Virus record (IMG/VR): IMGVR_UViG_3300023296_000874
Location: 124,001-188,000 of that record
Direction: 5' to 3' (one strand)
Length of the DNA stretch: 64,000 nt
Below the pieces are notes generated by a model that saw only the letters and a program-made list of their open reading frames with translations, was not told the origin of the DNA and did no database searches. Of this stretch, positions 4,424-62,778 are shown piece by piece (positions within the stretch are counted from its first letter, which is position 1; each line of letters opens with the position of its first letter). A program made the position numbers and the translations under genes.

Positions 4424-4438
4424 TACAAAAGGACTATG
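4424..4438 (-). promoter_or_regulatory. Candidate late promoter motif, copy 1 (CATAGTCCTTTTGTA)
   Basis: Matches CATnnTCCnTTTGTA and ends 13 nt upstream of ATG 4410. Confidence 0.65.
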
Positions 4439-4497
4439 TTCGAGGACGCTGCACATCCATACCAGATGCCGCGTTCATTGGTGTATGGAGACCTACC

Positions 4498-5073
4498 ATG
4501 GAAGTCATCGAGCCTGAAACGGCCTACTGGAGCTTGATCTCCATCGTGTTCATCATCCTCTACTCCTTCGGGGTGTTCAAGGAGTGGAGGGCGAAGCGTG
4601 CGGAGAGTGATCGCGAGATCTTCTGGATGAAGTTCGTGCTCGCCTGCGTCGTGGGCATCTTCTTCTCCGAGCTGATGGACGGCAGCTACATCCTTGCCGT
4701 GGTGTGGTTTGTGATTGCCATGATGAACATCCTCTCCATTGGGATGCGCACACGCTTGGTGACGATGCGGGCTGAGCGTCGAGCCACAACGGCCCAGTAT
4801 GAAGCTCGGGCTGAGGAGCAGATGCTCGAAATCAACACACACATCGAGCAGATGTCGGCAGATGGCCAGGCATCCATGGCCGAGGCCATCCGCGCGATGG
4901 TAGGCATCCCTGATGAGCGTCGCCAAGATCTCCTCCGCAGGTGTGGCGTTTCAACTGAGGCCGAAGAGCAGCTTGACAGCGTTGAGAGCGCCGCCGACTC
5001 CGGCAGTGCCACCGAGCAGGGTGACAGAGGCGACGTACTCTTTGGACCCAGCGGAAGGCACCCCCTCGATTGA
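4498..5073 (+). CDS. Membrane protein (about 3 TM helices plus coiled coil), antisense to the baseplate module
   Basis: GGAG RBS before ATG 4498. Three hydrophobic stretches. The 3' end overlaps the 4951-6687 gene by 123 nt. Confidence 0.6.
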   Translation: MEVIEPETAYWSLISIVFIILYSFGVFKEWRAKRAESDREIFWMKFVLACVVGIFFSELMDGSYILAVVWFVIAMMNILSIGMRTRLVTMRAERRATTAQYEARAEEQMLEINTHIEQMSADGQASMAEAIRAMVGIPDERRQDLLRRCGVSTEAEEQLDSVESAADSGSATEQGDRGDVLFGPSGRHPLD

Positions 5074-6687
5074 GTCATCGTTGAGGGCCTGTAGGATGCC
5101 GCCGTTGCCGTTGTCGGTAGTGGTGAACAGGCATCCGAAGCTGATCAGCTCAAACACCTGCAACAGCGCGATGATCGCCTGGATCACCTCAATGAAGGTG
5201 TTCAGCGTGTTGATCTTCGTCTGCAAGAGCTCAATGAATGCGATGATCTGATCCACTACTCCCGCAATGGACGCAAGCATCATCTCAACGAAGTTGCGTA
5301 GCTCTTCAACGGCCAGGATCACGGGCTCGAACAGGTCGCCAATGCCAACCTTGGTCCACCCCTCGCCCGTGAAGTCTGCCGAGCTCATCCACCACTTGCC
5401 GTCGGATGCGGTGGCCTCTGCAAAGGCGATAGAGCGCGCCGTAGTGGACTCGCCCTCACCTGGGATGTAGACGCCCTTCACCTCTGAAGGTGTGCCCGTG
5501 CCGCTGGTGGCCTTCAAGATGCTCTGAATGAGGGCCACGATCTTCTTCACCACGTCACTTGCGCCGGGGTTCACATCCGGAATGGTCAACGGGTTCAAAG
5601 GTCCGTACCTTGGAGTCACCTGGTACCAGTAGGCTTTTCCGGCCTCTACGGTCTCATCCAAGTAGGCGAACTGCTCGTGGGATGCGCCTACCATCGACTG
5701 ACCGAAGCCGAAGTTGACGTCCACCGTGTCGAGCTCATCAAAGGTGCGGACGGGCTCTCCTTCCTCGTCTCTTACCATCTCCCCGGCAGATTCCACTTCC
5801 CCAGCCGAGTCGAGCACGTCGTAGGTCTCGATCTCCCCGCCTTGGGTCTCGGAGCGTGAAATGGTGAAGGTGTTGGGGATGAGCTTCTGGTCAAGCTTCC
5901 AGGTGAGTAGCGCGGAGTCCGGTGTGCCACCTGTGGTCAGGATGGCACCAGAGTTCTTCTCTACGATCAGCTCTTCCCCAGTGAACCAATCAAACCTGAG
6001 CACGAGCTCCATGTTCTCGGGGTCGACTGCTACGCCCGCAGTCTCGAACTGAGATGCAAGAGTCGCGGTTGTGGCCAGGAGTGTGTCCTGGCGTGCGTTG
6101 ATGAGCTTGCCATCAATCCTGCCGTACCCGTCGTCGTAGTACTCGTTGTAGAACTCCCCGTTGATGGCACGCACGCTGAAGTTCTTGGGTGGGTTCAGGT
6201 TGGGTGCAGCCTTCTGCTTGAACAGCGCCATCAGGAAGCCAAAGGACGCCATCAACTCGCCAATATCACCTGAGGTGACTACGAGGTGGAAGCTGATCAC
6301 GGAGGCCGAAGAGCTGAAGTTCGGTCGGTTGGACGCGTCAGGGCTGAGAAGGGCGTAGGCCATGCGACCGCGCCAACCCGACATACCGCCCAACACGTTA
6401 GCCCCAAAGCCCTTGTCGGTAGGCTTAGGGGCGTCGACGTACATATACAGGCCCGTTTGGGAAAGGTCTGCAAGGAGCCCCTCCACAATAGCCAAGAGAG
6501 CCTTCAGAACGACTGCCAGGATGTTGGTGATGTCGAGCAGGAACACCTTGATGATCTCGAGGATCGTGGACACGATCTCAAGAATGGTGGACACCGCCTC
6601 AAGGACATCGCCAATAGCCTCAAGCGCGTCGAGTAGCTCTTCAGGGAGTCCGACGGATACGGAGACCCACTTACCGCTTGTTGCCAT
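4951..6687 (-). CDS. Hypothetical baseplate-region protein (helical termini, central FN3-like beta domain)
   Basis: 578 aa, operonic with the baseplate genes. The segment ALLTWK...YWYQVTP is FN3-like. Confidence 0.55.
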   Translation of the reverse strand: MATSGKWVSVSVGLPEELLDALEAIGDVLEAVSTILEIVSTILEIIKVFLLDITNILAVVLKALLAIVEGLLADLSQTGLYMYVDAPKPTDKGFGANVLGGMSGWRGRMAYALLSPDASNRPNFSSSASVISFHLVVTSGDIGELMASFGFLMALFKQKAAPNLNPPKNFSVRAINGEFYNEYYDDGYGRIDGKLINARQDTLLATTATLASQFETAGVAVDPENMELVLRFDWFTGEELIVEKNSGAILTTGGTPDSALLTWKLDQKLIPNTFTISRSETQGGEIETYDVLDSAGEVESAGEMVRDEEGEPVRTFDELDTVDVNFGFGQSMVGASHEQFAYLDETVEAGKAYWYQVTPRYGPLNPLTIPDVNPGASDVVKKIVALIQSILKATSGTGTPSEVKGVYIPGEGESTTARSIAFAEATASDGKWWMSSADFTGEGWTKVGIGDLFEPVILAVEELRNFVEMMLASIAGVVDQIIAFIELLQTKINTLNTFIEVIQAIIALLQVFELISFGCLFTTTDNGNGGILQALNDDSIEGVPSAGSKEYVASVTLLGGTAGVGGALNAVKLLFGLS

Positions 6688-6967
6688 TCTTCTTGACCCT
6701 CACTGTGTGCCCCTTGGCGTTGTTGGCGCGGGAGCGCATCATCACTTCCAGCTTCTTGAGCTGGCGGACGTGCTCCTTCTCGTACTCTTCCTTGGTCATC
6801 TCCATCAACCGTTTCACGATCTGAAGCTGAATGCGCAGCGGAGATTTGCCGCTGGAGAAGGTCCACCCCTCTTTCGGGGGGTTTTGCATCTCCTCTGCGA
6901 GCTTCTTCAACTCGGCTACCTCAAGCTCATCGATGTTGATGTCGTCAAAGTTGACCCTGAATTCCAT
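6671..6967 (-). CDS. Small hypothetical protein, baseplate module
   Basis: 98 aa, charged and helical, tightly packed between two structural genes. Confidence 0.7.
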   Translation of the reverse strand: MEFRVNFDDINIDELEVAELKKLAEEMQNPPKEGWTFSSGKSPLRIQLQIVKRLMEMTKEEYEKEHVRQLKKLEVMMRSRANNAKGHTVRVKKNGNKR

Positions 6968-6968
6968 A

Positions 6969-26065: not shown

Positions 26066-26080
26066 TACAAATGGAATATG
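26066..26080 (-). promoter_or_regulatory. Candidate late promoter motif, copy 2 (CATATTCCATTTGTA)
   Basis: Consensus match upstream of ATG 25994. Confidence 0.7.
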
Positions 26081-27007: not shown

Positions 27008-27060
27008 GACTGTTCCATCCTTCGGCGGTAGACTGCTCTTATACTGGAGGAACGATCCCT

Positions 27061-27579
27061 ATGCCTGACAACTCAGAGCCCATCTCAAAGCTCGACCTGC
27101 TCTTCGATGATGGTGACATCGACAACGCCACCCTGCTACAGAGGTTCAAGTGGAACGTTCTGGAAGACGGTCAATGGGACTTCAGTAACGGTGTCCATAC
27201 CGCGAAGGGTCACTTCATCACGGTCACCTACTCTGGAGCCCACAAGGGTAGCCCAGCCGACCACAGCCTCAGGCTCGGTGACGTGCTCGGCATACGCAAG
27301 GGGAGATGTTGGCGTGTCAAGGCCAGCCGTATGCCAGGCAAGTTTGACAGCTACGGCATTGCCCTTGGGTGGTACGACGACAGTGACGCCGCACTGGTGC
27401 TTGTGTCGGGCCGCATCAACAACATCGGGTCCAACTGGGAAGCTGGGGACCGTCTGTACCTACCCTTCTACGGCTTCGGCGGGCCGGACCAGACCAACGG
27501 GAACCGTAGTGACACGTTCCCCATCGGCATTGCTGTTGGGCCGAAGGACATGCTGTTCGTGCCGCGTTTGGACGTTTAA
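27061..27579 (+). CDS. Hypothetical protein, possibly capsid decoration/cement-like beta fold
   Basis: 172 aa with GGAGG RBS. The segment WEAGDRLYL...IGIAVGPKDMLF resembles virion cement/fibre domains. Confidence 0.55.
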   Translation: MPDNSEPISKLDLLFDDGDIDNATLLQRFKWNVLEDGQWDFSNGVHTAKGHFITVTYSGAHKGSPADHSLRLGDVLGIRKGRCWRVKASRMPGKFDSYGIALGWYDDSDAALVLVSGRINNIGSNWEAGDRLYLPFYGFGGPDQTNGNRSDTFPIGIAVGPKDMLFVPRLDV

Positions 27580-27810: not shown

Positions 27811-27841
27811 CGAGCCCTCCTGAGTAACTCAGGAGGGCTCG
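27811..27841. terminator. Perfect 14-bp hairpin between convergent genes
   Basis: cgagccctcctgag-taa-ctcaggagggctcg. Confidence 0.75.
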
Positions 27842-28141: not shown

Positions 28142-28336
28142 TCAGTACCTTCGCTGCCGCTTTCGCTGAAGTCTTTCGGTATGCTGACGCATCTGATCAT
28201 AGAACGCGCGGTGGAGACGGTCGAGCTTGTCCTCGATAGAGTCCACCCGGTCCTCAACCGACCGCGCTGCACTCTTGTCCAGCGAGGCTGCAATCCGATC
28301 AGCGAGATCGGATATGCGGTTTTGGATACCGTCCAT
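28142..28336 (-). CDS. Small helical late protein
   Basis: 64 aa, start overlaps the sheath stop. Contains RISDLADRIAAS. Confidence 0.7.
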   Translation of the reverse strand: MDGIQNRISDLADRIAASLDKSAARSVEDRVDSIEDKLDRLHRAFYDQMRQHTERLQRKRQRRY

Positions 28337-31300
28337 CAGCGGCTACGGAGGTTGAAGGTCACCACGATGTAGTTCAGGGGGAACACAGGCACGTAGGCCA
28401 GTTCAACCTGCACGGCGGTCGGGTCCGCTGCATCGGGGGTTGCCTTCACGGCGGTGTAGCTCGTGATGATCTCAGCGGCAATGAGGCTCTTCATTGTGGT
28501 CTTAACCGCGCGCTCGATGTCACCGAGTACGCCGCCAAGGAACTTGATACCAATGAACTGAGAGAGGGTAGAGCGCATCACAAGCTGAACGTGGTCAGAG
28601 ATCGTGATAACGGTCGGCTCCCTCTTCAGGGTGGAGCTCATGTTCGTCGTGAATGCCTGGCGGATGCGGATGTTCGGATCCAGGTCCTCGAGCACGGTGA
28701 TACCGGCTACGGCGGTCTGGTTCTTCTCTACCTCATCCATCTCACGCACGAGGCGCTTGAAGCCAACAATCTGTCGGAAGGTCATGGGCGATGCTACGTC
28801 GTATGCCGTGCTCACGTTGGAGCCCGCAACTGCGGCAGCCAGGAAGGAGCCATCAACGATGTGCTCCGTCTCTACGCCCTGCTCATCCGTCAGCGATACA
28901 ATCGCAGAGTCAGGGTACACAGCCCACAGGCGCTCGTTGGCGTAACCCTGTGCTGCACTCTGAGCGGCGGTAGGAGTGGTACCATCAGCAAATCCGAAGA
29001 TCGTGATGCGCTCCTGACGCCATCGAGGGCTGCTCTGTACGATGCAGTGCGTCTTGCAGAAGGCAATCACCTGCGGCTCGGTCGTCACGGGCATGATGAG
29101 TGCGGGGCGGAACCTGCGCTCAATCGGCTTGCGGAGGCTGTCAATGGCATCGATGTACGATGTCACGGTACCGTCCGTGCCGCCCGTCTCCTTCACAACC
29201 TGCTTTCCGGCAACCAGGAGGGCACCGTTGGCAATCGCAAGGAACATGGCCAGCGTCAGCCGGTTGGTCGGATCCAACGCGCCGTACTCAGCGGTGATGT
29301 CACCGAACTTGGTGAACACCTTGGCGTCGTAGTTCGTCTTCTCGTAGCAGTAGGAGATGTAGTACGTGTCACCGTTGGCGGGCTCGTTTCCGGCCTTGTC
29401 GAAGGTGTCAATGCAAGCGGTGTCGCCCACTCCGATGTCGGCGGTGTTCGCTACCTTCACCTCAGCACCGTGCATCGCGTACACAGGGTTGCTGCTATCC
29501 GTCACGAAGGTCTTGAGCACGCTGAAGCGGATCACGCCTCCGTCGTCGTAGGAGGATGCCTCGGTGGGGAGCAAGAAGCTAATCCGCAGTCCCGTCACTT
29601 CGTCGATGTAGGTCTGTCCCACAACGCCTTCGAAAACGGTGCCGCTACCTGTTCCCGTCGGGTGGCTGATGCTGAAGGCATCGTCCATGAAGGATTCAAC
29701 GGCGAACTGAGCGTATGCGTCTTCCCCGCCATCCGTCTGTCCGGCTTCGAAGCCGAGCAGTGTGTAGGCATCGTTCGCAACCGCGTTCAGGGTCAGAGTC
29801 TCACTCAAGCCCGTTGCGTCAGTAGTGAGGCGCACGCAGTCGCCTTCAACGGTAGCAGTCACATCGCCCAGTGCGAGGTTGATGTCTGCTGCCACGGTGG
29901 TCGCACTCACGGAGCTACCGGTCGTGGTATCGGCATCGAAGCCAAGCTCAGTGTTCGCGGTACCGGAGGCAATCAGGATCAGAGCCGAATCGCCTACGTT
30001 CACGCTGGTCAGTACAACCACGCCACTGTCGTCCGTGGCAACCACTCCAGTGTCGGTCCCAGGTACAACGCCGGTAGAACCGGTGGTGCCCGTAGAGCCG
30101 CTGGAGGTGATGCCCGTTCGAAGTGCGCCGTTGATCTGGTCTGCAACCTCTTCAGCGGTGAGCCCGTTGCCGAGGAAGATCACCTCGGTCAGTGTGCTGC
30201 TCTCATCGCTACGGAGGTAGAAGGTCAGGCCGTCAAGGTCGAAGGTCTGAGTACCAGTACCGGTCACAACTGCGGGTCGCGCCGCCGTCAGGGTGATGGT
30301 AGTTCCATTCACGCTGATGGTGTCGCTCACGCCGTTTTCGAAGGCCCAAGGTCCATCTTCGCCGCAGAACAAGGTCGCGCCGCGAGCAATCTGCTCTTCC
30401 ACTTCAATCTCAACGTACTCTTCAACAGGTACGCCTGAGCCATCGTGGAACATGCCCAGCAGAGTCTGGCTGCCTGTACCCCAGTTCAGGGTCTGGCTAA
30501 TCGCGCTCTTGCTGATGTACTTGGCGTCGTAGATGAAGTCGTTGAGCAGCTCGCTCTCAACCGTGTAGGTACCGGTGCCGGAGGCTCCCGCAACTACGTT
30601 GGTCAGGGTGTAGCAGTCATCAACCAGGAAGTTGGTGAAGTAGGTAGCGAACACACTCTCGTTGGGCTGTACGTCCTCAGCGAGCGTGATGAGCCGGTTG
30701 GCTCCGTCTACCTTGATCACCGTCACCGGGTTGCGGCTCATGGCGTCTACAACATCCTCACCCACGTAGGCGGTGATGAGCTCGGGACGGTCAGTCACAA
30801 GGTCAAGACGCCCATTGGAGATGGCGTTGAAGGTGTCGCTTCCGAGTGTGGTGTCACGCCCGTTGCCCAAGGTGGGCACGTAGGTGAGGCGGAACACGTC
30901 GCTGCTCACTGCCGAGGTAGCGGGGTCCGTGTAGGAAGCGGCGGCATCCAGATACACCTTGGTGTCCACAAGGGTCACGGTGATCTGGGTTTCGTCGAAG
31001 TACTCGGTACCGTCGATGTGAATCACGGAGTTGATTGCGTAGCTGCTTCCCCAGTAGATCAGGGCCGGGCCTGCGCTCTGGTTCTTCACTACGAAGTCAG
31101 TCTCCTCGATGTAGGAGGCATCGCCGGGGGCGAGTCCTACACGGGATACTTCGGTCACATCAGCATCGGGCAGGTAATCGAACGTGTCCTGCCAGGTGTT
31201 GTGGTAGTAGGTCACCAACACAACAGCGCCGGATGCGGGAGCTGCGGCGAGTACGATCTCGCCAGTGCTCCCACTCACGCTGCTCACGGTCACCGCAACG

Positions 31301-31917
31301 CCGTCTACTTCCACAACCACATCAGATGCAGTAGTGGAGGTTACGCCGCCGTTGGTTCCGTCAACAACCGGCACATTGAACACCTTGATGGTGGTCGCGG
31401 TGCCGTCACACTGATCGCTCACGTCGTCCGTGAAGGAAGTGTCGGTACGGTTGAAGTAGTAGGTGCAACGCACGTCGGCAGAAGCACTCGGGAAGCTCTT
31501 CAGCGTCACGAGTCCCAAGGTACCGCTCACTGCGGTAACCTGCACTTCTTCGCCGTCTACGGTGACGGTCACATCTGCTGCGCTGGTCGAGGTCGTACCC
31601 TGCCCATCGCCCTTGACGATTGGGTAGTTCGTTACCTGGAACTGCCGCAGTGCTCCATCTTGTGCTCCAAGGACGGGGCTCTGAGGGTTCGCGAGCGAGG
31701 TTACCCACCGCGCACTCAGATCTTCCTTGGTGATGAGGTTGTCAGAAATCGCCGAGCTGCCGCGAATCATCTCGTAGTCGTCGCGGCACAGCACTTCCTG
31801 CCCTACGCCAATGAAGACGGGAAGGCGAATGGTGTCAATCAGCGTATTGACGGCTGGCTCAAACAGAGTTCGAGTGTACACGCCCGGTGGAACGTAGCTG
31901 GTGAATGGACCCGGCAT
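28336..31917 (-). CDS. Contractile tail sheath protein with large inserted beta domains
   Basis: About 1193 aa. N-terminal YVPPGVYTRT and C-terminal sheath domain (TEPQVIAFCKTHC...ERITIFG...EPTVITISDHV...AYVPVFPLNYIVVTF). Confidence 0.9.
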   Translation of the reverse strand: MPGPFTSYVPPGVYTRTLFEPAVNTLIDTIRLPVFIGVGQEVLCRDDYEMIRGSSAISDNLITKEDLSARWVTSLANPQSPVLGAQDGALRQFQVTNYPIVKGDGQGTTSTSAADVTVTVDGEEVQVTAVSGTLGLVTLKSFPSASADVRCTYYFNRTDTSFTDDVSDQCDGTATTIKVFNVPVVDGTNGGVTSTTASDVVVEVDGVAVTVSSVSGSTGEIVLAAAPASGAVVLVTYYHNTWQDTFDYLPDADVTEVSRVGLAPGDASYIEETDFVVKNQSAGPALIYWGSSYAINSVIHIDGTEYFDETQITVTLVDTKVYLDAAASYTDPATSAVSSDVFRLTYVPTLGNGRDTTLGSDTFNAISNGRLDLVTDRPELITAYVGEDVVDAMSRNPVTVIKVDGANRLITLAEDVQPNESVFATYFTNFLVDDCYTLTNVVAGASGTGTYTVESELLNDFIYDAKYISKSAISQTLNWGTGSQTLLGMFHDGSGVPVEEYVEIEVEEQIARGATLFCGEDGPWAFENGVSDTISVNGTTITLTAARPAVVTGTGTQTFDLDGLTFYLRSDESSTLTEVIFLGNGLTAEEVADQINGALRTGITSSGSTGTTGSTGVVPGTDTGVVATDDSGVVVLTSVNVGDSALILIASGTANTELGFDADTTTGSSVSATTVAADINLALGDVTATVEGDCVRLTTDATGLSETLTLNAVANDAYTLLGFEAGQTDGGEDAYAQFAVESFMDDAFSISHPTGTGSGTVFEGVVGQTYIDEVTGLRISFLLPTEASSYDDGGVIRFSVLKTFVTDSSNPVYAMHGAEVKVANTADIGVGDTACIDTFDKAGNEPANGDTYYISYCYEKTNYDAKVFTKFGDITAEYGALDPTNRLTLAMFLAIANGALLVAGKQVVKETGGTDGTVTSYIDAIDSLRKPIERRFRPALIMPVTTEPQVIAFCKTHCIVQSSPRWRQERITIFGFADGTTPTAAQSAAQGYANERLWAVYPDSAIVSLTDEQGVETEHIVDGSFLAAAVAGSNVSTAYDVASPMTFRQIVGFKRLVREMDEVEKNQTAVAGITVLEDLDPNIRIRQAFTTNMSSTLKREPTVITISDHVQLVMRSTLSQFIGIKFLGGVLGDIERAVKTTMKSLIAAEIITSYTAVKATPDAADPTAVQVELAYVPVFPLNYIVVTFNLRSR

Positions 31918-31987
31918 CAACTGCCTCCGGAGTGGAAAGCTGTGAGACCGCCAATATAGGAGGTCATGATCATCAGCTCCCTCTGAT

Positions 31988-32002
31988 TACAAATGGAATA
32001 TG
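31988..32002 (-). promoter_or_regulatory. Candidate late promoter motif, copy 3 (CATATTCCATTTGTA)
   Basis: Consensus match about 70 nt upstream of the sheath start. Confidence 0.7.
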
Positions 32003-38852: not shown

Positions 38853-39412
38853 GGTTTCTCCATCAGGTTCCGAAGGTCGTCCTCAGCACTTCCCAGGCTA
38901 CCGTCCTCATTCTCCTCCACCTTGATGCGTGAACCTTTCACATCAGGAGAGGCAAGTACGGAAGGGATGAATACGGGGACGTCTCGGTCTACATGGGTTG
39001 AGGTTTTGGGGTTCGCGGTTCGGGACGGGACGTAGCTAACTTTTCCAATCTGACTCCCGAGACGATCTACCGATGTGATCAACTCCCGAAGGAGTCTGTG
39101 TGTTTCCACATCCGGAGCCGTACTTCGGTCCAGTCCCTTGACGGACTCCACAAAACGATTATGAAGCTCCTCGTAAGAAGGCTCCTCAATCGGTGCGGGG
39201 CCGCGACGTCTCTTGAGTCCCTTCTCGGCGGGCTTGGGTCTCTGCACCGCTGGCGGCACCACCTTGATCTCGCCCTTCTTGATGGCAGTCCTGAGCTGAG
39301 CGCTCCGACGTACAATGCGGTCGTCGATCTCAACCGTACCCACTCTGAACACAATGTTGGGAGTGACGTCGCTGAGCCGGAGTCCGGCAATGTTGCACTT
39401 CAGTGTGATCAT
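38849..39412 (-). CDS. Hypothetical protein, neck module
   Basis: 187 aa, coupled on both sides. Confidence 0.7.
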   Translation of the reverse strand: MITLKCNIAGLRLSDVTPNIVFRVGTVEIDDRIVRRSAQLRTAIKKGEIKVVPPAVQRPKPAEKGLKRRRGPAPIEEPSYEELHNRFVESVKGLDRSTAPDVETHRLLRELITSVDRLGSQIGKVSYVPSRTANPKTSTHVDRDVPVFIPSVLASPDVKGSRIKVEENEDGSLGSAEDDLRNLMEKP

Positions 39413-42250: not shown

Positions 42251-42265
42251 TACAAATGGACTATG
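42251..42265 (-). promoter_or_regulatory. Candidate late promoter motif, copy 4 (CATAGTCCATTTGTA)
   Basis: Consensus match at the head of the neck/actin/terminator gene run. Confidence 0.7.
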
Positions 42266-46455: not shown

Positions 46456-46470
46456 TACAAACGGAATATG
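46456..46470 (-). promoter_or_regulatory. Candidate late promoter motif, copy 5 (CATATTCCGTTTGTA)
   Basis: Consensus match at the very start of the minus-strand block. Confidence 0.7.
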
Positions 46471-46592
46471 AGTCCCACACTCACTCGCTGGGGCGGCGAC
46501 CTCGAAATAAGTGAGATACTCTCTAACTTCTAACCTCAGAGGGTCGTTAGAGGGACCTAAGCCCAACGATACCGGCCAAAGGAGCCCAGCGA

Positions 46593-49135: not shown

Positions 49136-49150
49136 GCATAGGAGCCTGAG

Positions 49151-49933: not shown

Positions 49934-49973
49934 GTTCGATACTCTCTGACTTTCAACGGCTTCCACTCGTTAC

Positions 49974-52807: not shown

Positions 52808-52816
52808 GAGGACCCC

Positions 52817-53266: not shown

Positions 53267-53274
53267 GAAGTGAC

Positions 53275-53550: not shown

Positions 53551-53601
53551 CCTCTGAGTTCTGAGTGCCTCACCTCGTTATCCCTATGTAACGGAGGCAC
53601 C

Positions 53602-53958: not shown

Positions 53959-53981
53959 ACCATCCACCAGTAGGAAAGGGA

Positions 53982-54500: not shown

Positions 54501-55069
54501 CGGGCGTAGGGGCTGAAGGATCATCTGCTGAAGCGGCTGCTGTATAAGCATTTGCTGTAGCACTGGTACCGTTGGTACTGGCATAGGTATTCGGATCAAG
54601 GGCTGTCGGAGGTATAGTTTTAGACCCAGGGAGCTTCACTGTATTGACTCTGTATCTGAGTCTCTCTATTGAGTAGAGAGTAGATAGAGAGTCAGTCATG
54701 CTACTTCTGGATGGCAGACACCGGAGCTTCGTTGAGCACGCTTCGGTGTGGAACATCTGCCCTCCCTGATGGAGTTCACCTTTCCGCCATGAGCGGAGTT
54801 GGACAATTCTTTTAGGCTCGCGGAACCCATAGACGAGACCTCTGCTTCCACAGCAGATAAAGACATCACGCTTCGATTTACTCAGGCGTTGGGGCGTTTG
54901 ATTATGCTCGATCAAATGCGACAGGCTTCCTGCTCGTAGGTGGTGCTTCGATGAAGTAGTACACGCGGATTATCGGCGGATAGCGAATTCATTCTATAGT
55001 TCTTTCCCTGGAGGCTTGACTCCTCATGGCAGTTGCGTCCTACAAGCATCCACTTGAACAGGATGAAGC

Positions 55070-56005: not shown

Positions 56006-56047
56006 AAACCGTCTGAGTTTCCCACCCCTCGGCTCGTTGTACGGGTA

Positions 56048-56614
56048 ATGGAGGCAGACAGCATGTTCGGATCGACACTTCAGATGGTGCGCCACCCCGA
56101 CCCCCGACTGGAGCAGGTTTCTGCAACAGTTGAAGAGGGTGAGTTTGGTGCCGACATGCTGACCCGCGCCCAGGCCATGAACCACCTCCGCAAGATCGAG
56201 GGCGGCATTGGTATCGCGGGTGTGCAGGTTGGCGACATGCGCCGCATCCTGCTCGCGGTTGTGGGTGAGAAGCCCGCACATCAGGCCAGCCGCGACGCTA
56301 CCTTCTTCGCGAACCCCGTGATCACCGCTCATGGTGACACCGTACCCTCCGGCTTCAAGGAGGGATGCCTCAGCTACCCCAAGCTCAAGGTGAACATCCA
56401 CCGCTACGCCTGGATCGTGCTTGAGTGGCGCGACTTTGACGGCAGCCAGCACACCCGCCGCTTTGAGGGGATGGACGCCATCGTGCTTCAGCACGAGATG
56501 GACCACCTTGACGGCAAGACCCTTCTTCAGCAGGCCTCATCGACGGCGAAGCGCAAGTTCGCTACCGGAAAGCTCCCACGCCCCAAGAAGACGCGTAGAA
56601 GCTCCCGCCGCTAA
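56048..56614 (+). CDS. def: Peptide deformylase
   Basis: GIGIAGVQVG, EGCLS and QHEMDHLDG motifs, with a basic C-terminal tail. Confidence 0.95.
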   Translation: MEADSMFGSTLQMVRHPDPRLEQVSATVEEGEFGADMLTRAQAMNHLRKIEGGIGIAGVQVGDMRRILLAVVGEKPAHQASRDATFFANPVITAHGDTVPSGFKEGCLSYPKLKVNIHRYAWIVLEWRDFDGSQHTRRFEGMDAIVLQHEMDHLDGKTLLQQASSTAKRKFATGKLPRPKKTRRSSRR

Positions 56615-56738
56615 GTAGCCGACAACTCGGCACTTTCATGAAAGTTTAGTTCGTATTGCGATTTACTCTGAGTATCTCGCGGATGGTTTCGTTTTCCTTA
56701 TGTAACCCCCAAGGGGAAGTACAGAAGGAACCAAAACC

Positions 56739-57737
56739 ATGCGACTCTATCCCGCCCTCATGATTGCCCTACTCACCCTCACCGTGGGCTGTATGCCCGC
56801 ACAGGGGATCCTCGAAATCGAAGAGGACCCCACCGAAGACTGCTGCCCTGACGAAGATGACGACGTTGTGGTGGACGATGACGACGACTCCGGCGACACC
56901 GGTGATGACGACGACAGCGCCTGCGTTGACTGCGGCGACGATGATGACCACGGCGACAGCGACGTGGACAACGACGAGGACGGATACTTCGACGACGTTG
57001 ACTGCAACGACTACGACGACACCGTGTACCCCGGCGCGGAGGAGACTCCCTACGATGGCATCGACAGCAACTGCAACGGCCTCGAGGACGACTACGACTT
57101 CGACGGTGACGGCGAGGTGGCCCTGGGCTACGGCGGCGCGGACTGCAATGACCTGGATGCGGACGTGAACCCCGACGCGGACGAGGTTTGGTACGACGGC
57201 GTCGACCAGAACTGCGACGGGTGGAGCGACTACGACCAGGACGGCGATGGCTTCGACAGCGAGAGCTACGGCGGCGATGACTGCAACGACATCAACGGCG
57301 TGATCTTCCCCGACGCTCCTGACGTGTGGGACGGAGTGGACAGCGATTGTGATGGAGACGCTGACTACCTGGAGATGGAGGTGGCTGCACCCACCACCGT
57401 AGCCTCTACCACGACCATCGAGATTGAGGACGGCGACCCCAGCGGCCACTTCATCGAAATGTGGAACACCGTGATCGACGAAGAGGGTGGCGTTGACGAG
57501 AGCTACTACGGCTACTACGAGGTGGACGTGGACGGTACCTGCCTGAGCCTCTTGGCGGGTGACGAAGGCTGCGGGACGATGGCATCAGCAGGCGACCTCC
57601 TGATGACCTGGCTTGCTACGAACAGCACCCTGATCCTCTGGAACAGCACGGAGACCGAGTGCGTGGCCTGGGGAGCGTACCTCGACCTCCACGACGCGGC
57701 TGGACTCTGTACCGTGATCTCCCCCGACGCCCTGTAG
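56739..57737 (+). CDS. Acidic lipoprotein with three MopE-related putative metal-binding repeats
   Basis: Lipobox LTVGC, poly-Asp linker, then three copies of D.DGDG...DCND....P.A.E..YDG.D.NCDG. Confidence 0.85.
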   Translation: MRLYPALMIALLTLTVGCMPAQGILEIEEDPTEDCCPDEDDDVVVDDDDDSGDTGDDDDSACVDCGDDDDHGDSDVDNDEDGYFDDVDCNDYDDTVYPGAEETPYDGIDSNCNGLEDDYDFDGDGEVALGYGGADCNDLDADVNPDADEVWYDGVDQNCDGWSDYDQDGDGFDSESYGGDDCNDINGVIFPDAPDVWDGVDSDCDGDADYLEMEVAAPTTVASTTTIEIEDGDPSGHFIEMWNTVIDEEGGVDESYYGYYEVDVDGTCLSLLAGDEGCGTMASAGDLLMTWLATNSTLILWNSTETECVAWGAYLDLHDAAGLCTVISPDAL

Positions 57738-57969
57738 GAACCCACCCCAGATCCTCCTGTACTTCCCCGGTGCCCCTGCTCTTCGCAGGGGCATTCGAGG
57801 TCTTCGTCTTGTTTGACGGATACGTGCCTGAAAGCGCCCTGACCACAAGGGTTTAGACCACCGCTATCCAGTTCGAAGCTTCGCAACTTCTGGCCGGACT
57901 TGTTGTTCAATGACATACGCCTCACCTGGGGCTAAAACGCGACAGTGAACCAGAAAACGGAGCTAATCC

Positions 57970-60435
57970 ATGGACAGCCGATTTGCCACTCGTAACTTCG
58001 GCGGCGCATCTCGCCGCTACTTCTTCGTCGAGGCTTTGGCCTGCGGTTCGACCGACACGGTCGACACCGATACGAACCCCTCCCATCACATCGTCGTGCT
58101 GGACGCCTCCGGCTCCATGTACCGCGACATGGCCTCGATGAAGGCCACCGTGCGCAAGCTCTGGACCCTCGAGGAGTTCCAGAACAGCAACCAGCTCGTG
58201 AGCCTCCTCAGCTACTCTTCGGAGGGCGACCTCCGCACCCACTTCAGCCGCGTGCGCGTAGCTGACGTGATGGCAGCGGACAGCAGCTACCTCAAGGAGA
58301 TCGACAACCTCCGCGTGCGTGGCCTCACCTGCATGAGCCAGGCCCTCGAGGGTGCCCGCCAGCTCTGCCAGACCGGCGAGCTGACCTGCATCACCCTCCA
58401 CTCCGACGGCTACGCCAACCACCGCTCCCCGACTCAGGAGCGCCGCACGATCGACCGCATCATTGGCGACTTCGCCGGTATGCAGGACGTGTACGTCAAC
58501 ACCATCGCTCACCGCGCGTGGAGCGACTTCGGACTGCTCAACAGCATCTCCAACTCCCTGAGTGGCAAGTGCGTGCAGGCGGGTGACATCCGCGCGGTGT
58601 TCGATGCACTCCACGACACGACCACGCTGCTCAGCGGCCAGCGCACCCCGGCAATCGCCCAGCAGATCGGCAACGCCGACTACCAGGTGTTCGTCAGCGT
58701 GGATGACGGCCGAGTGAACGGCACCGACGGTGACCTGCAGGTGACCGGGCTGAGCAACGACGGCGACAAGACCATCTACCGCTACCGCAGCGTCACCGAG
58801 GCCGAGTACAACAGTTCTTCTCTGCCCGAGTGTGGAGAGGGCAACGACGACCTGACCCCGGTGTACGCCTACAGCCGTGCGATGCTGGCCGAGGGTAGCC
58901 TCAACACCGCCAAGTACGCGCTGGTGAGCACCCGCAACGGCACGCTCCTCGACGAGTACAGCCGCGCCCTGACCAACGAGGAGATCGCGGCCTTCAGCAA
59001 CGGCCTCGAGAACGTGCTCTTCAACGACCCCGACCACACCTTCAGCGATGGCTACGGAGTGGACACCTCGGTTGCCCCCGTGCTGAGCATCCTCGGCGTG
59101 CTGGACACTTGGAGCCGGGCACTGCGCCTCGACACCAAGGCTCTGAGCGCTGGCTACAAGCGGCGTGGCCTCAAGCGCGTCGCTGGCAAGCGTCTGGATG
59201 ACGGCTCGCTCGAGCTGCCCTGGATCGACTCCGTGGAGACGGACACCGATGACTTCGCCCAGGTTGGCGCGGTTGAGGTGAACCGCAACACGGCGACGGC
59301 CAACATCCGCGTCGAGCGTTCGATGCAGATCGTTGAGCGGGAGAGCGGCAACGCGATCCTCGACATCAGCGGTGTGGACGTCAGCGACCTGAAGAGCTAC
59401 CGGAACTACACCCTCGTGGGTGACGGCAGCTTGAACGTGAGCGAGATCGTGGTGCAGATCAGCGACAAGCGTGCCTTCCGCGAGTTGGTTGCGCTGGGCG
59501 TGCTGACGGGTGACTACAACCCGACTGCCTCCTACACCATCAGCCTCGCCGGGCGTCCGCTGGTTGCCTTCGACCAGACCTACGCTTCCATCGACGGCGT
59601 GTTCGACACCTTGGCTCAGTACAAGGCGCTCGGCAGCATCCTGACCGCACTGACCGCGACGACCTCCGAGGCGTTGACGGGCGAGCAGGTGACCGAGCTG
59701 AAGCGTCACTACCTGAGCCCGGCGCTCTACCTCAGCCTCCCGACCACCTACGAGTACACGGAGCTCGACGATGCGATGGCGGACGGCAGCGTCGACACCC
59801 GCCTCTCCTACAAGGTGGACATCGGCAACACCGACATCGTGAGCACCGGCAAGCTGAAGAGCGCCAACGCCTACCTGGTGCGCCGCTTCACCGTGGCTCT
59901 GGACAACGTGGCGCAGAAGAAGGGCACCTGGGCGATGTGGTGGGACGACAACTACAGCGTCGGACTCAAGAAGCTGACCGCGCGTACCAAGCTGGACGCC
60001 ACCGACGACATCCTGATGCCGATCTTCGAGGGCTTCCTCGGCTTCGGCAACTCGGCGGCGGTGACCGACATCCTGGTTGCTGCGGGTGCGGATGCGGCCT
60101 TGGTTGCCTCCATCGAAGCTTCGCTGGTGAAGACCAACGAGCCCGAGGAGCAGGTTGAGGCCTTCAACGCTGCCAAGCGTTGCGTGAAGGCGGCTGAGAA
60201 GGCGCTCTTCGCGGACCGCGTGAGCCCCGTGGCCTTCTACATCGGCGCAACCGGCCTCGTGCCGGATGAGTTCGATGCTCCGGCCATGACCGCTGACGAC
60301 CTCGCGGGCAGCTTCCCCAACATCAAGCTCTCCAAGGGCGAGAAGGAGGGGACGTTCTTCCAGGTGGGCAGCAGCCTCATCAGCGTGTTCATCAAGGAAG
60401 AGCGCTTCAGCACGGGGAACCAGGCCACCGCCTGA
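57970..60435 (+). CDS. von Willebrand factor A (vWA) domain protein
   Basis: 821 aa. MIDAS VVLDASGSM, then GLTCMSQAL and LHSDG. The long C-terminal region is unassigned. Confidence 0.85.
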   Translation: MDSRFATRNFGGASRRYFFVEALACGSTDTVDTDTNPSHHIVVLDASGSMYRDMASMKATVRKLWTLEEFQNSNQLVSLLSYSSEGDLRTHFSRVRVADVMAADSSYLKEIDNLRVRGLTCMSQALEGARQLCQTGELTCITLHSDGYANHRSPTQERRTIDRIIGDFAGMQDVYVNTIAHRAWSDFGLLNSISNSLSGKCVQAGDIRAVFDALHDTTTLLSGQRTPAIAQQIGNADYQVFVSVDDGRVNGTDGDLQVTGLSNDGDKTIYRYRSVTEAEYNSSSLPECGEGNDDLTPVYAYSRAMLAEGSLNTAKYALVSTRNGTLLDEYSRALTNEEIAAFSNGLENVLFNDPDHTFSDGYGVDTSVAPVLSILGVLDTWSRALRLDTKALSAGYKRRGLKRVAGKRLDDGSLELPWIDSVETDTDDFAQVGAVEVNRNTATANIRVERSMQIVERESGNAILDISGVDVSDLKSYRNYTLVGDGSLNVSEIVVQISDKRAFRELVALGVLTGDYNPTASYTISLAGRPLVAFDQTYASIDGVFDTLAQYKALGSILTALTATTSEALTGEQVTELKRHYLSPALYLSLPTTYEYTELDDAMADGSVDTRLSYKVDIGNTDIVSTGKLKSANAYLVRRFTVALDNVAQKKGTWAMWWDDNYSVGLKKLTARTKLDATDDILMPIFEGFLGFGNSAAVTDILVAAGADAALVASIEASLVKTNEPEEQVEAFNAAKRCVKAAEKALFADRVSPVAFYIGATGLVPDEFDAPAMTADDLAGSFPNIKLSKGEKEGTFFQVGSSLISVFIKEERFSTGNQATA

Positions 60436-60453
60436 TCTCCTGAGTTGATGCGG

Positions 60454-60489
60454 ACGACGCCCGAGTGGGGAGACCTGCTCGGGCGTCGT
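60454..60489 (+). terminator. 12-bp hairpin after vWA gene
   Basis: acgacgcccgag...ctcgggcgtcgt. Confidence 0.55.
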
Positions 60490-60591
60490 TGGTCCTGACC
60501 CGTCCATGACTCAAGTCCGACGTCTACACACTTCTGGGCCGCTCTTGTGGTTCTATGGCTGTACCTGAACAACTTGCACCCCGGAACCCTT

Positions 60592-61092
60592 ATGCGCGAA
60601 TTGACCATCTACGTCACGGATGACGGGAGGCGGTACGACGACAAGCGTGCCGCTCAAGAGCATGAGGCAGTCGATGCCGCCATGCTCCCTCTCTTGGCGA
60701 TGCTCCCCCCGAAGTACGACATCCCCTACGCGCAGTACATCGACCACGGGCCGTCCGCCTACGTCCGGGGACAGGAAGCTCGCCTTGCCGCCTACACCTA
60801 CCTGCGAGACAACCCGCCGCAGTACAAGAGCATGGACCACGCCCGCATCCCAGAGGTGATCCAGGCGCTCGTTGATGGCAAGGACGTGAACGACGGGTGG
60901 ATCGAACGCTGCATCCTCTACGAGAGCACCCCGTGGGCGAACATGCGTCAGATCTTCAGCCGCCTTGCTTGCATGGACGCGGGTGGGCGGGAGTACGACC
61001 AGCAGTACCACAAGAACAACAGCGAGAAGACCACCGAGCACATCGTCCCCGGTTACAGTCGCAGGCTTGACCTGTTGATGGAGGAAGCATGA
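60592..61092 (+). CDS. Hypothetical protein ending RRLDLLMEEA
   Basis: 166 aa from ATG 60592, with an ATGA overlap to the next gene. Confidence 0.75.
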   Translation: MRELTIYVTDDGRRYDDKRAAQEHEAVDAAMLPLLAMLPPKYDIPYAQYIDHGPSAYVRGQEARLAAYTYLRDNPPQYKSMDHARIPEVIQALVDGKDVNDGWIERCILYESTPWANMRQIFSRLACMDAGGREYDQQYHKNNSEKTTEHIVPGYSRRLDLLMEEA

Positions 61093-61571
61093 AAGAGATC
61101 CGTAGCCCCCATGCAGTGAGCTGGCATGACACCGATGGCCCGACCATCTTCCTCGCTGGCTCCATTGAGGGCGGCAACGCTCCTCCGTGGCAGGCTGAGT
61201 TCGTGGAGCGCTTCAAGGGTGAGCGTGGCACCATCGTCAACCCACGCCGCAAGGACTGGAATCCTGAGCACAGCAAGTACCGCCACCCCGCGCTCATCGC
61301 TCAGATCCAGTGGGAGCTGAAGGCACTCTCCAAGGTGGACCTGATCTTCATGTACTTCGCGCCCGGCACCATCTCCCCCATCTCGCTTCTTGAGCAGGGT
61401 TGGTTCGGATTCCAGCACGGGAAGGAAGGGAACATGATCACCGTCTGCCCGCCCGAGTACTTCCGCGCCACCAACGTAGAAGTGTTCTGCGAGATGGTTG
61501 GCATCGATGTACACCTCGACCTCTGCGAAGGCTACGACGCCGTAGAGGATTGGCTGGAGGCGCGTAGATGA
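61089..61571 (+). CDS. Nucleoside 2-deoxyribosyltransferase-like protein (Nuc_deoxyri_tr2 type)
   Basis: IFLAGSIEGG...WQ...IVNPRRKDW...QIQWE...SPISLLEQG. Confidence 0.85.
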   Translation: MKEIRSPHAVSWHDTDGPTIFLAGSIEGGNAPPWQAEFVERFKGERGTIVNPRRKDWNPEHSKYRHPALIAQIQWELKALSKVDLIFMYFAPGTISPISLLEQGWFGFQHGKEGNMITVCPPEYFRATNVEVFCEMVGIDVHLDLCEGYDAVEDWLEARR

Positions 61572-61936
61572 AGATCCATACCTGGATGCTCGAAGCAGGC
61601 GCGGTGCTCGCCGTGCTTGTGACCGTGGCGCTCTTTAGCGACAAGGGGGCAGTAGAGTGGGTTGGAGTCTATGGCGTCTTCATGAGCTTCCTACACTCCC
61701 AGGTATCTGACCGCCTCGCAGAGAAGGAGGCTCAGAGGTACGACCTCGGCTCCAACATCGATGGACTTGTGGAGTGCTATGCGTGGGAGCGTCGGTACTT
61801 CTACGCCAAGGAGGGCGGCTGGTTCTTCTACTTCATGGCTCTGGAGGCCTGGAGCGCTTTGGTAGGCGTCTTCGTATTCCTTGGCTACCGCATCTGGCGG
61901 AAGTTCTACCGACGATATCGACCCCTTCGCACTTGA
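61568..61936 (+). CDS. Small membrane protein
   Basis: 122 aa with 3-4 hydrophobic segments, coupled to the upstream gene. Confidence 0.7.
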   Translation: MKIHTWMLEAGAVLAVLVTVALFSDKGAVEWVGVYGVFMSFLHSQVSDRLAEKEAQRYDLGSNIDGLVECYAWERRYFYAKEGGWFFYFMALEAWSALVGVFVFLGYRIWRKFYRRYRPLRT

Positions 61937-61992
61937 AGCTGATCTCACCGTTTCTTGACTTGACCCTGAACCCCTTGACCCGGAGCGCACAA

Positions 61993-62301
61993 ATGCGTCG
62001 CCTTCTTCTCCTCGCCTCCCTTTCCTTGCTCGTCGGCTGTTCCAACCTCACCGCTGGTGAAGTGACGGAGGCAGAGACCACGGGTATTGCCCACTGCGAG
62101 AAGCTCCACGCGGGCTCCACCTGCGCCGCTGCCTGTCAGGAGCGGGACACGGATGAGGACGGCTTTGTCCGTTGCAGCCTCACCGCCACGCCTGATGGCT
62201 CCACTGTGGCTCAGGACCTTCCGGCCCTCGAGTGCGCCTACGGCAAGACGTGGAGCTGGGCGAAGGGCTGCCGTCAGCCCAACAAGGCCGTCACGCGCTG
62301 A
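61993..62301 (+). CDS. Small Cys-rich lipoprotein
   Basis: MRRLLLLASLSLLVGC lipobox from ATG 61993, with six further Cys. Confidence 0.75.
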   Translation: MRRLLLLASLSLLVGCSNLTAGEVTEAETTGIAHCEKLHAGSTCAAACQERDTDEDGFVRCSLTATPDGSTVAQDLPALECAYGKTWSWAKGCRQPNKAVTR

Positions 62302-62737
62302 GCACGTTCCGGATGATGCGCTCAATGAAGGGCACCATCTTGTAGCGTTTGAGATCGTCCACACCCACCCAGGCGATTGCGATGTTCTCGTGATCTGTCA
62401 GGCGTGGCTTCCCTCTGTAGCCCTCACTCACGAAGGGATGCAGGATGCCGAGCTCCGGACCCATGTTGATGGACCGGAGCTTTCGCAGTCTTCCGGGTCG
62501 GATCCCAGCTTCCTCAACGAGCTCACGCACCGCGCCTTGCTGTGGCGTTTCTCCGGCATCCACTCCACCGCCCGGTAGGTTCCACGCCAAAGGCATCCAA
62601 GGGGCTGTACCGCCGCGCTGTAGTAGGAGGACCTTGCCGTCTTCCACTACGACAGTGACGGCTGAGTGCTCAAGCTGAACAGCCGCCGCCAGCTTGCGGA
62701 TCTCACTTGATGTGGATGTTTTCTGTGGTGCTGGCAT
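62291..62737 (-). CDS. Nudix hydrolase (MutT-like), late-type gene
   Basis: Nudix box GGGVDAGETPQQGAVRELVEEAGI. Shares TAPWMP with the Nudix domain of 44044-46038. N-terminus SSEIRKLAA. Confidence 0.9.
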   Translation of the reverse strand: MPAPQKTSTSSEIRKLAAAVQLEHSAVTVVVEDGKVLLLQRGGTAPWMPLAWNLPGGGVDAGETPQQGAVRELVEEAGIRPGRLRKLRSINMGPELGILHPFVSEGYRGKPRLTDHENIAIAWVGVDDLKRYKMVPFIERIIRNVLSA

Positions 62738-62763
62738 GGGTGCCCTCCTAACTGGGATGTGAC

Positions 62764-62778
62764 TACAAAGGGATCATG
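62764..62778 (-). promoter_or_regulatory. Candidate late promoter motif, copy 6 (CATGATCCCTTTGTA)
   Basis: Consensus match 26 nt upstream of the Nudix ATG 62737. Confidence 0.65.

What the first reader, a model, noticed from the sequence alone, without database searches (positions are those of the whole stretch)
4424..62778. 15-bp motif CATnnTCCnTTTGTA marks six minus-strand transcription starts (candidate phage late promoter)
Seen: copies at 4424, 26066, 31988, 42251, 46456 and 62764, all in the same orientation and each 13-71 nt upstream of a minus-strand start codon. One precedes the lone minus-strand Nudix gene inside the plus-strand region. With 12 fixed bases, about 0.008 copies are expected by chance in 128 kb at uniform composition. 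It does not resemble sigma70 -35/-10. Inference: it is the target of a phage-encoded sigma factor or RNA polymerase and defines the late regulon.
Basis: partly seen in the sequence, partly recalled or inferred. Interest (0 to 1): 0.6.

Follow-up and report, generated by a model that had tools for sequence, protein, structure and literature searches.

The report
Late-gene promoter of a jumbo phage
The 15-base motif is real and behaves like the start signal for the tail and head genes of an uncultured salt-lake giant phage; this is an ordinary kind of phage control element, and the protein that reads it is not identified.

Summary
CATNNTCCNTTTGTA occurs six times in the window, all on the minus strand, with none expected by chance.

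- **Where the window lies.** It is part of a 257.5-kb virus contig. I extended that contig to 341 kb, and the genome is still not closed.
- **Copies.** The 341 kb hold 19 exact and 10 one-mismatch copies. All lie between genes, although about 92% of the sequence is coding. All point at the next gene, mostly 13-71 nt before its start codon.
- **Genes served.** Copies head the tail-sheath, baseplate and major-capsid operons and the genes after portal and terminase. They are enriched in structural gene blocks: 19 of 29, against 4 of 39 for a second motif class (p = 4e-6).
- **Form.** The motif is one block, tCATAwTCCnTTTGTAg, with no -35 box.
- **Second class.** CTCTGAGT-N16-CGTT is ECF-sigma-like and has about 39 copies before metabolic, replication and cell-like genes.
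- **Reading enzyme.** I found no phage RNA polymerase. The one sigma-like gene is an ECF-like domain fused to four winged-helix repeats.
- **Relatives.** Related metagenome contigs that carry this sigma keep both motifs.
- **Missing evidence.** No RNA data exist, so start sites are inferred.

Verdict: a real late or structural promoter class, and a new member of a known kind.

The parts
4424..4438 (-). Class B motif CATAGTCCTTTTGTA, 13 nt before the ATG of a 462-aa gene (3022-4410) that lies upstream of the baseplate-wedge gene
   Evidence: the Shine-Dalgarno GGGGGAG lies between motif and ATG
26066..26080 (-). Class B motif CATATTCCATTTGTA, 71 nt before the gene 25329-25994; the next gene (24473-25144) resembles a Tunturi_5 virion structural protein
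   Evidence: 48% identity to gp329
31988..32002 (-). Class B motif CATATTCCATTTGTA, about 70 nt before the tail-sheath gene
   Evidence: (phrog_2839 tail sheath, E 2e-35)
28336..31920 (-). Tail-sheath gene, served by the copy at 31988
27811..27841 (-). Terminator-like hairpin (14-bp stem, 10 G-C pairs) about 500 nt downstream of the sheath gene's end
42251..42265 (-). Class B motif CATAGTCCATTTGTA, 34 nt before the gene 41575-42216
46456..46470 (-). Class B motif CATATTCCGTTTGTA at the head of the 18-gene minus-strand block; 23 nt before the gene 46040-46432; divergent from the class A site at 46521
62764..62778 (-). Class B motif CATGATCCCTTTGTA, 26 nt before the Nudix gene 62291-62737
46521..46548 (+). 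Class A promoter-like site CTCTAACT-N16-CGTT at the head of the plus-strand cell-like gene cluster
49944..49971 (+). Class A site CTCTGACT-N16-CGTT
53552..53590 (+). Hybrid site: class A -35 box, N16, then CGTTATCCCTATGTA, which resembles class B (2 mismatches)
56666..56704 (+). Hybrid site: class A -35 box, N16, then CGTTTTCCTTATGTA, which resembles class B (2 mismatches)
27051..27078 (-). Class A site CTCTGAGT-N16-CGTT before the gene 26102-27007, inside the tail module
39149..39163 (-). Two-mismatch copy CATAATCGTTTTGTG inside the ORF 38849-39412; the same 17-mer is intergenic at genome position 100472; status uncertain

Best explanation
The motif is the core promoter of a second temporal class, mainly virion or 'late' genes, of an uncultured jumbo myovirus of more than 341 kb that infects a bacterium in salt lakes.

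It is a single 16-17-bp block, t-CAT-A-w-TCC-n-TTTGTA-g, with no -35 element. Its position relative to Shine-Dalgarno sites and start codons implies that transcription starts within, or a few bases after, its 3' end.

The phage appears to encode no RNA polymerase of its own. The motif is therefore most likely read by the host core enzyme carrying a phage-specified specificity factor, as in T4 late or phiEco32 middle and late transcription.

A separate, more numerous class A, CTCTGAGT-N16-CGTT, has ECF-sigma architecture. It serves metabolic, replication, translation-related and cell-like genes, and is the likelier target of the one sigma-like protein found (P0001).

- **Shown:** the motif, its placement, orientation and gene association, its conservation in relatives, and the sigma-like fold of P0001.
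- **Inferred:** that it is a promoter, the start site, the late timing, and which factor reads it.
For: - **More than chance.** The window has 6 exact copies against 0 in 100 shuffles. The contig has 17, and the reversed control none.
- **Placement.** All 29 copies with at most one mismatch lie between genes in sequence that is about 92% coding, and all are co-oriented with the next gene. None lies in a convergent gap.
- **Distance.** For 24 of 29 copies the distance to the start codon is 13-71 nt, median about 34, usually with a GGAG-type ribosome site in between.
- **Heads of blocks.** Seven copies sit at the heads of strand blocks. Copies 72747(-) and 72758(+) are back to back and overlap by 4 nt, which fits divergent DNA-level promoters.
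- **No upstream element.** No information content is seen from -45 to -2, so there is no -35 box.
- **Genes served.** These are:
  - the sheath gene;
  - the operon containing the major capsid protein, and a virion protein;
  - the gene preceding the baseplate wedge;
  - the genes after portal and terminase.
- **Structural bias.** 19 of 29 class B sites, against 4 of 39 class A sites, lie in structural strand blocks that make up 34% of the sequence (Fisher p = 4e-6).
- **No competing promoters.** Sigma70-type promoter matches are not enriched in the tail module: 3 found against 5.5 expected.
- **Conservation.** Two other metagenome contigs carry a homologue of P0001 and are syntenic with this genome. 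L207 has an exact copy and a one-mismatch copy, and L208 has a one-mismatch copy, each before an ATG. Class A is kept at orthologous sites in L205 and L208.
- **No polymerase, one sigma.** No PF00940, PF00562 or canonical sigma model hits the contig, and no such Pfam family is on record in the extensions. The N-terminus of P0001 folds as an ECF-type sigma. Foldseek's top hits are all ECF sigmas. VIA-align gives Z 9.8 at 1.4 Å over 64 residues to SigR region 4, and Z 8.3-8.7 over 130-155 residues to whole ECF sigmas. One homologue is named sigma24 by JGI.
Against: - No transcription start site is mapped. All 21 public runs that hold the phage are DNA.
- The factor that reads the motif is not identified.
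- The genome is not closed, so a polymerase or a second sigma could lie in the missing part.
- About a third of the copies lie outside structural blocks, so the 'late' label is an inference from gene content, not from timing.
- My gene calls come from a home-made GC3 and ribosome-site caller, so individual start codons and distances may be off.
- The helical sigma-fold Z-scores of 8-10 are in the range where the tool warns of common arrangements.
Confidence: 0.72

Rival explanations
1. The motif is the promoter of a phage-encoded RNA polymerase, either single-subunit T7/N4-like or a split multisubunit phiKZ/AR9-like enzyme, whose gene lies in the unassembled part of the genome or is too divergent to detect.
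For: The motif is a contiguous, almost invariant block of about 16 bp that ends in TA followed by g (11 of 17). This resembles T7-class promoters, which end in TATA|G (my own recollection of the T7 promoter). The genome is not closed at 341 kb.
Against: Six-frame searches of the contig with PF00940 and PF00562 found nothing. No such Pfam family is on record for any gene in the 84 kb of extensions. No DFDGD-type catalytic motif occurs in any large ORF. The PF00940 search had no positive control, because that family rang in none of the 14 control genomes.
Confidence: 0.08
2. P0001, the ECF-like sigma with winged-helix repeats, reads this motif rather than class A, using TTTGTA as its -10 element as phiEco32 gp36 uses AATGTA. 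Class A would then be read by a host alternative sigma or by an unseen factor.
For: P0001 is the only sigma-like gene found in 341 kb. It is itself expressed from a class A promoter, which fits an early-gene to late-sigma cascade. The gp36 chain 9m7y_F is among the fold matches (E 0.056). The gp36 consensus AATGTA, centred at -11.5, shares TGTA with the motif (PMC12276001). P0001, class A and class B occur together in relatives and are all absent from LR745208 and Tunturi_5.
Against: P0001 has a well-formed region 4, the -35-binding domain (Z 9.8 to SigR region 4), but class B has no -35 box. Class A has exactly ECF architecture (an AAC-like -35, 16-17 nt, then CGT), and ECF sigmas typically drive their own gene. 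With TTTGTA at -14 to -9, the start at the 4424 copy would fall inside its ribosome site.
Confidence: 0.15
3. The motif is not the core promoter. It is the binding site of a phage late activator or repressor next to weak, unrecognised promoters.
For: Two class A promoters carry a class-B-like tail, TCCnTATGTA, immediately after their CGTT. The 3' half may therefore act as a separable module.
Against: No conserved -10 or -35 element lies at a fixed distance on either side. At the 4424 copy only 13 nt remain before the ATG, which leaves no room for a separate downstream promoter.
Confidence: 0.08
4. The motif acts in RNA as a 5'-leader element for processing, stability or translation, perhaps linked to the phage's own IF3, L7/L12-like and SmpB genes.
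For: It always lies upstream of a start codon on the coding strand. The phage carries translation-related genes.
Against: It occurs only at about 29 of about 450 genes, typically at the heads of operons or strand blocks. In the back-to-back pair at 72747/72758, each transcript would have to start inside the other's motif. There is no conserved structure or fixed spacing to the ribosome site.
Confidence: 0.04

Closest known systems
T4 late promoters (TATAAATA, read by gp55 with gp33 and the sliding clamp)
   Same: A single short element near -10, no -35 box, placed before virion genes, and read by host core enzyme with a phage specificity factor (named from my knowledge of T4).
   Different: The sequence is unrelated and twice as long (16 bp against 8 bp). 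No gp55 or gp33 homologue was identified. Any dependence on replication or the clamp is unknown.
phiEco32 middle and late promoters (AATGTA centred at -11.5, read by the phage sigma gp36 with gp79; PMC12276001)
   Same: A phage-specific consensus that contains TGTA. A distant sigma homologue is encoded by the phage, and the gp36 chain is among the fold matches of P0001.
   Different: In the solved complex gp36 also contacts a -35 region, whereas this motif has no upstream element. P0001 carries four extra winged-helix repeats. No gp79-like protein is recognisable.
T7-class single-subunit polymerase promoters
   Same: A contiguous, nearly invariant block whose upstream part is AT-rich and which ends in TA before a frequent G.
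   Different: No T7-like polymerase gene was found.
ECF (group 4) sigma promoters
   Same: The phage's other class (CTCTGAGT-N16-CGTT) has this architecture. In two hybrid sites the CGT of that class aligns with the CAT of the finding's motif.
   Different: The finding's motif has no -35 box and has CAT instead of CGT.
phiKZ/AR9 non-virion polymerase late promoters
   Same: Short jumbo-phage late signals at the start site, with no -35 box (PMC7598289, title and abstract only; the rest from memory).
   Different: Those phages encode split beta and beta-prime subunits, and none was found here.

Membership tests
Promoter (transcription start signal) in general | Lies between genes, upstream of and co-oriented with the genes it serves | tested here: met
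   29 of 29 copies
Promoter (transcription start signal) in general | RNA 5' ends begin at a fixed short distance from it | not testable with these tools
   Only DNA runs hold the phage
Sigma70-type -35/-10 promoter | A TTGACA-like element 16-18 nt upstream of the -10 | tested here: not met
   No information content from -45 to -2
Sigma70-type -35/-10 promoter | A TATAAT-like -10 hexamer with A at position 2 and T at position 6 | tested here: inconclusive
   CATAwT keeps A2 and T6 in all 17 exact copies, but C replaces T1 in every copy
T7-like single-subunit polymerase promoter | The phage encodes a T7-like polymerase | tested here: not met
   PF00940 absent from the contig and from the precomputed Pfam hits of the extensions; the genome is not closed
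phiKZ/AR9-type non-virion polymerase promoter | The phage encodes split beta and beta-prime homologues | tested here: not met
   PF00562 absent; no DFDGD motif in any large ORF
T4-type late promoter | A single -10-region element with no -35 box, before late genes | tested here: met
T4-type late promoter | gp55- and gp33-like factors | not tested
   I knew no family accession to search with, and the general sigma models were negative
ECF sigma promoter | An AAC-type -35, a 16-17-nt spacer, and a CGT-type -10 | tested here: not met
   Class B lacks a -35 box. The phage's class A does meet this
phiEco32 gp36-type promoter | An AATGTA-like -10 read by a phage sigma homologue | tested here: inconclusive
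   TGTA is shared, and a sigma-like gene is present (PMC12276001). Neither the start site nor binding was tested

The most novel reading that the evidence does not exclude
The -35-less motif is read in an undescribed way. One possibility is that the four winged-helix repeats fused to the ECF-like sigma P0001, or the single-repeat protein encoded next to it, take the place of -35 recognition and switch one sigma between two promoter classes. The other is an entirely unrecognised late specificity factor in a phage clade that has neither a canonical sigma nor its own polymerase.
Probability: 0.12. Interest if true: 0.7.

Novelty: new member of a known kind. Interest (0 to 1): 0.45.

Why it matters
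It gives a two-class transcription map for an uncultured salt-lake jumbo phage lineage. One class is ECF-like and serves metabolic and replication genes. The other is a single -35-less block that mainly serves virion genes.

The map predicts operon boundaries and likely timing for hundreds of genes of unknown function. It also pairs two very specific promoter sequences with a compact sigma candidate that can be tested in vitro.

The kind of element, a phage-specific late promoter, is well known. The interest therefore lies mainly in annotation and in possible orthogonal promoter-sigma parts, unless the reader of the motif proves unusual.

Tried and rejected
- **Archaeal TATA/BRE reading.** TTTGTA resembles a haloarchaeal box A, and the source is a salt lake. 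I rejected this because the genome carries bacterial hallmarks: an OmpA-domain protein, IF3, SmpB, peptide deformylase, NAD-dependent ligase, clamp-loader delta-prime and an ECF-like sigma. Strong GGAG ribosome sites also follow the motif.
- **Bacteroidota -7 element (TAnnTTTG).** It is close (TCCnTTTG), but C replaces A in every copy, and ribosome sites are used. I did not pursue it.
- **Host identification.** The PyrB-like gene gave only 52-57% identity to many phyla, so the host remains unknown.
- **Motif in IMG/VR.** Two scans returned only single, chance-like matches, mostly in AT-rich contigs.
- **Relatives by protein in IMG/VR.** Searches with terminase and with the sigma alignment found nothing.
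- **Distant relatives.** LR745208 and Tunturi_5 have neither motif nor a P0001 homologue. Their canonical sigmas have no homologue here.
- **PDB sequence search with the sigma alignment.** Nothing useful.
- **Pfam and PHROGs on genes downstream of the motif.** Mostly no hit.
- **Strain variation from four runs.** Diversity was too low to test selection on the motif. None of the 40 listed differences (6 more were not shown) falls in the two copies covered by the divergent contig.
- **Terminators.** They are not enriched upstream of copies.
- In some searches my references for minus-strand genes dropped the start codon and kept the stop. This is harmless for profile scans, but it caused two or three failed exact look-ups (and probably 47).
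Full report
**1. Observation**

CATNNTCCNTTTGTA matches six times in the window, at exactly the stated places and all on the minus strand. None of 100 dinucleotide-preserving shuffles gave a match.

The window is bases 124001-188000 of a 257,533-bp IMG/VR virus record with 59.5% G+C. That record holds 17 exact copies, 16 on the minus strand and 1 on the plus strand. The reversed control pattern has none.

**2. Placement**

I called genes with a codon-position (GC3) and ribosome-site caller, because no gene finder was on hand. It gave 322 genes and 93% coding density.

- All 17 exact copies lie between genes and point at the next gene on their own strand.
- All eight one-mismatch copies in the contig do the same.
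- Seven copies sit at the heads of strand blocks, including a 79-gene block and a 42-gene block.
- At 72747(-)/72758(+), two copies lie back to back and overlap by 4 nt between divergent genes. This is hard to reconcile with an RNA-level role.
- The aligned copies give t-CAT-A-w-TCC-n-TTTGTA-g. Nothing is conserved from -45 to -2, so there is no -35 box, and nothing is conserved downstream except ribosome sites.
- The distance to the start codon is 13-71 nt for 24 of 29 copies. At window 4424 only 13 nt remain, and these hold GGGGGAG. If that ribosome site is used, transcription must begin within, or a few bases after, the motif's 3' end.

**3. What the genome is**

- The terminase has its best matches in an uncultured 485-kb phage (LR745208, 43% identity) and in the jumbo myovirus Tunturi_5 of Acidobacteriota (31% identity) (PMC11924767).
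- 21 public runs labelled as salt-lake metagenomes hold the sequence, and all are DNA. Start sites therefore cannot be mapped.
- Using exact-protein look-ups I walked off both contig ends through overlapping public contigs. The merged sequence is 341,284 bp and still not closed. CheckV's completeness estimate of 81%, which implies a genome of about 318 kb, is therefore too high.
- The extensions carry aminoacyl-tRNA synthetases, T4-type RNA ligase, Thg1, primase, clamp loader, RecA, RecD2, LigA, ribonucleotide reductase, peptide deformylase and SmpB. These are bacterial hallmarks.
- In the 341 kb there are 19 exact and 10 one-mismatch copies, all between genes and all oriented toward a gene. 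None lies in a convergent gap.

**4. Genes served**

- The copy at window 31988 precedes the tail-sheath gene. A terminator-like hairpin with a 14-bp stem lies about 500 nt downstream of that gene.
- The copy at window 26066 heads a two-gene unit whose second gene resembles a Tunturi_5 virion protein.
- The copy at window 4424 heads the unit that precedes the baseplate wedge.
- Outside the window, copies precede:
  - the operon that holds the major capsid protein (49% identity to the Tunturi_5 protein);
  - the genes after portal and after terminase;
  - the 23-gene block that contains a tail-spike-like giant protein.
- Of the 29 class B sites, 19 lie in strand blocks that contain structural markers. 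Those blocks make up 34% of the sequence.
- The other ten sites precede, among others, a Nudix gene, a nucleotidyltransferase-like gene and a glycosyltransferase cluster, and some lie in the replication region.

**5. A second class**

K-mer enrichment in upstream regions revealed CTCTGAGT, CTCTAACT or CTCTGACT, then 16 (rarely 17) nt, then CGTT. This class has 39 intergenic, oriented copies in the 341 kb.

- This is the architecture of ECF-sigma promoters.
- The class dominates the regions that encode nucleotide metabolism, replication, tRNA repair and translation-related genes.
- It also heads the window's plus-strand region. That region is not a recognisable early module. It is a cluster of cell-like genes: a solute-binding protein with an OmpA domain, an ABC permease and ATPase, a PyrB-like carbamoyltransferase, and MopE-like and VWA proteins.
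- Only 4 of 39 class A sites lie in structural blocks (Fisher p = 4e-6 against class B).
- Two class A sites in the window (53552 and 56666) carry a class-B-like tail directly after CGTT, namely CGTTATCCCTATGTA and CGTTTTCCTTATGTA. The CGT of class A therefore aligns with the CAT of class B.
- Sigma70-type promoter matches are not enriched in the tail module.

**6. The reading enzyme**

Six-frame searches of the contig with the following models found nothing significant:

- T7-like polymerase;
- RpoB domain 6;
- Sigma70 region 2;
- Sigma70 region 4;
- the general sigma-70 model.

The polymerase search had no positive control. No large ORF has a DFDGD catalytic motif. The sigmas of the two distant relatives have no homologue here.

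A weak region-2 hit led me to read the 583-aa ORF at 37901-39652, kept as P0001.

- Its first 200 residues look like sigma regions 2 and 4.
- It has six homologues at 51-64% identity, one of which JGI names 'sigma24 family'.
- An AlphaFold model built on that alignment has mean pLDDT 68, and about 80 in the helical domains. It shows a four-helix domain, a disordered linker, a second four-helix domain, and then four winged-helix-like repeats.
- Foldseek's best matches are all ECF sigmas: SigH, SigE and SigL, with probability about 0.99 and E from 5e-3.
- VIA-align gives Z 9.8 at 1.4 Å over 64 residues to SigR region 4, and Z 8.3-8.7 over 130-155 residues to whole ECF sigmas. The tool warns that helical Z values below about 13 can be common arrangements. 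The case therefore rests on the consistency of the list, the domain order and the sequence pattern.
- P0001 has no paralogue in the 341 kb. A 90-aa ORF next to it is a single copy of the repeat.
- P0001's own promoter is class A.

Because P0001 has a region 4 and class A has a -35 box, I assign P0001 to class A at roughly 60:25. The rest allows for neither. That leaves the class B reader unidentified. The alternative, that P0001 reads TTTGTA much as phiEco32 gp36 reads AATGTA (PMC12276001), is kept as a rival.

**7. Relatives**

- Four metagenome contigs carry P0001 homologues and are syntenic with bases 30-50 kb of this genome.
- The two with similar G+C keep class B. L207 has an exact copy and a one-mismatch copy, and L208 has a one-mismatch copy, each before an ATG.
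- L205, at only 39% G+C, keeps class A at the orthologous site before the DUF1848 gene. L208 has CTCTAAAA-N16-CGTC before its sigma gene.
- LR745208 and Tunturi_5 lack P0001, class A and class B.
- The sigma and both motifs therefore travel together in this lineage.

**8. Verdict**

The motif is real, far beyond chance, and best explained as a -35-less promoter class used mainly for virion genes.

A phage polymerase is unlikely.

This is a new member of a well-known kind of element. The open point of interest is what reads it.

Noticed in passing
window 46593-62301 (+ strand): A cluster of cell-like genes inside the phage: a solute-binding protein with NMT1 and OmpA domains, an ABC permease and ATPase, a PyrB-like carbamoyltransferase, a MopE-like metal-binding protein and a VWA protein. 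G+C and GC3 are higher here than in the rest of the genome. The cluster is driven by class A sites.
   Followed up: partly
genome 37901-39652 (L011:11901-13652, - strand) and 37553-37828: An ECF-like sigma fused to four winged-helix-like repeats of about 90 aa each; homologues are 389-579 aa long. The next gene is a conserved 90-aa ORF that is a single copy of the repeat. It could be a regulatory partner.
   Followed up: partly
genome 1-59 kb and the extensions (L177, L182, L186, L198, L200): Translation-related genes in a phage: IF3, an L7/L12 C-terminal domain, SmpB, peptide deformylase, AsnRS/AspRS-like and TyrRS/TrpRS-like synthetases, Thg1 and T4-type RNA ligase. ARAGORN found no tRNA gene in the 257-kb contig.
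   Followed up: no
whole record: CheckV's completeness estimate of 81% implies a genome of about 318 kb. Overlapping public contigs already give 341 kb, and the ends do not meet.
   Followed up: yes
L020:9814-10211 (genome 210814-211211): A hypervariable stretch in the N-terminal part of the 224-aa gene just downstream of two class B copies. One strain contig (run X4) differs at 56 positions in 1.3 kb while the flanks are identical. It may be a receptor-binding or otherwise diversifying protein.
   Followed up: no
merged sequence, about 267650-268390 (right extension) and -30950 to -30590 (left extension): Extra fragments similar to the major capsid protein of Tunturi_5 (33-47% identity), away from the capsid gene itself.
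   Followed up: no
L203 (Tunturi_5 265853-290443): Upstream regions of Tunturi_5 structural genes share their own motif, roughly GTTCKGACT ... CCTTAGA. Its TTAGAG part recalls the CGTTAGAG form of class A here. I saw this by eye only.
   Followed up: no
window 39149-39163 (-) and genome 100472: The identical 17-mer TCATAATCGTTTTGTGG (two mismatches to the motif) occurs twice, once between genes and once inside an ORF. The second could be an internal promoter or a mis-called gene.
   Followed up: no
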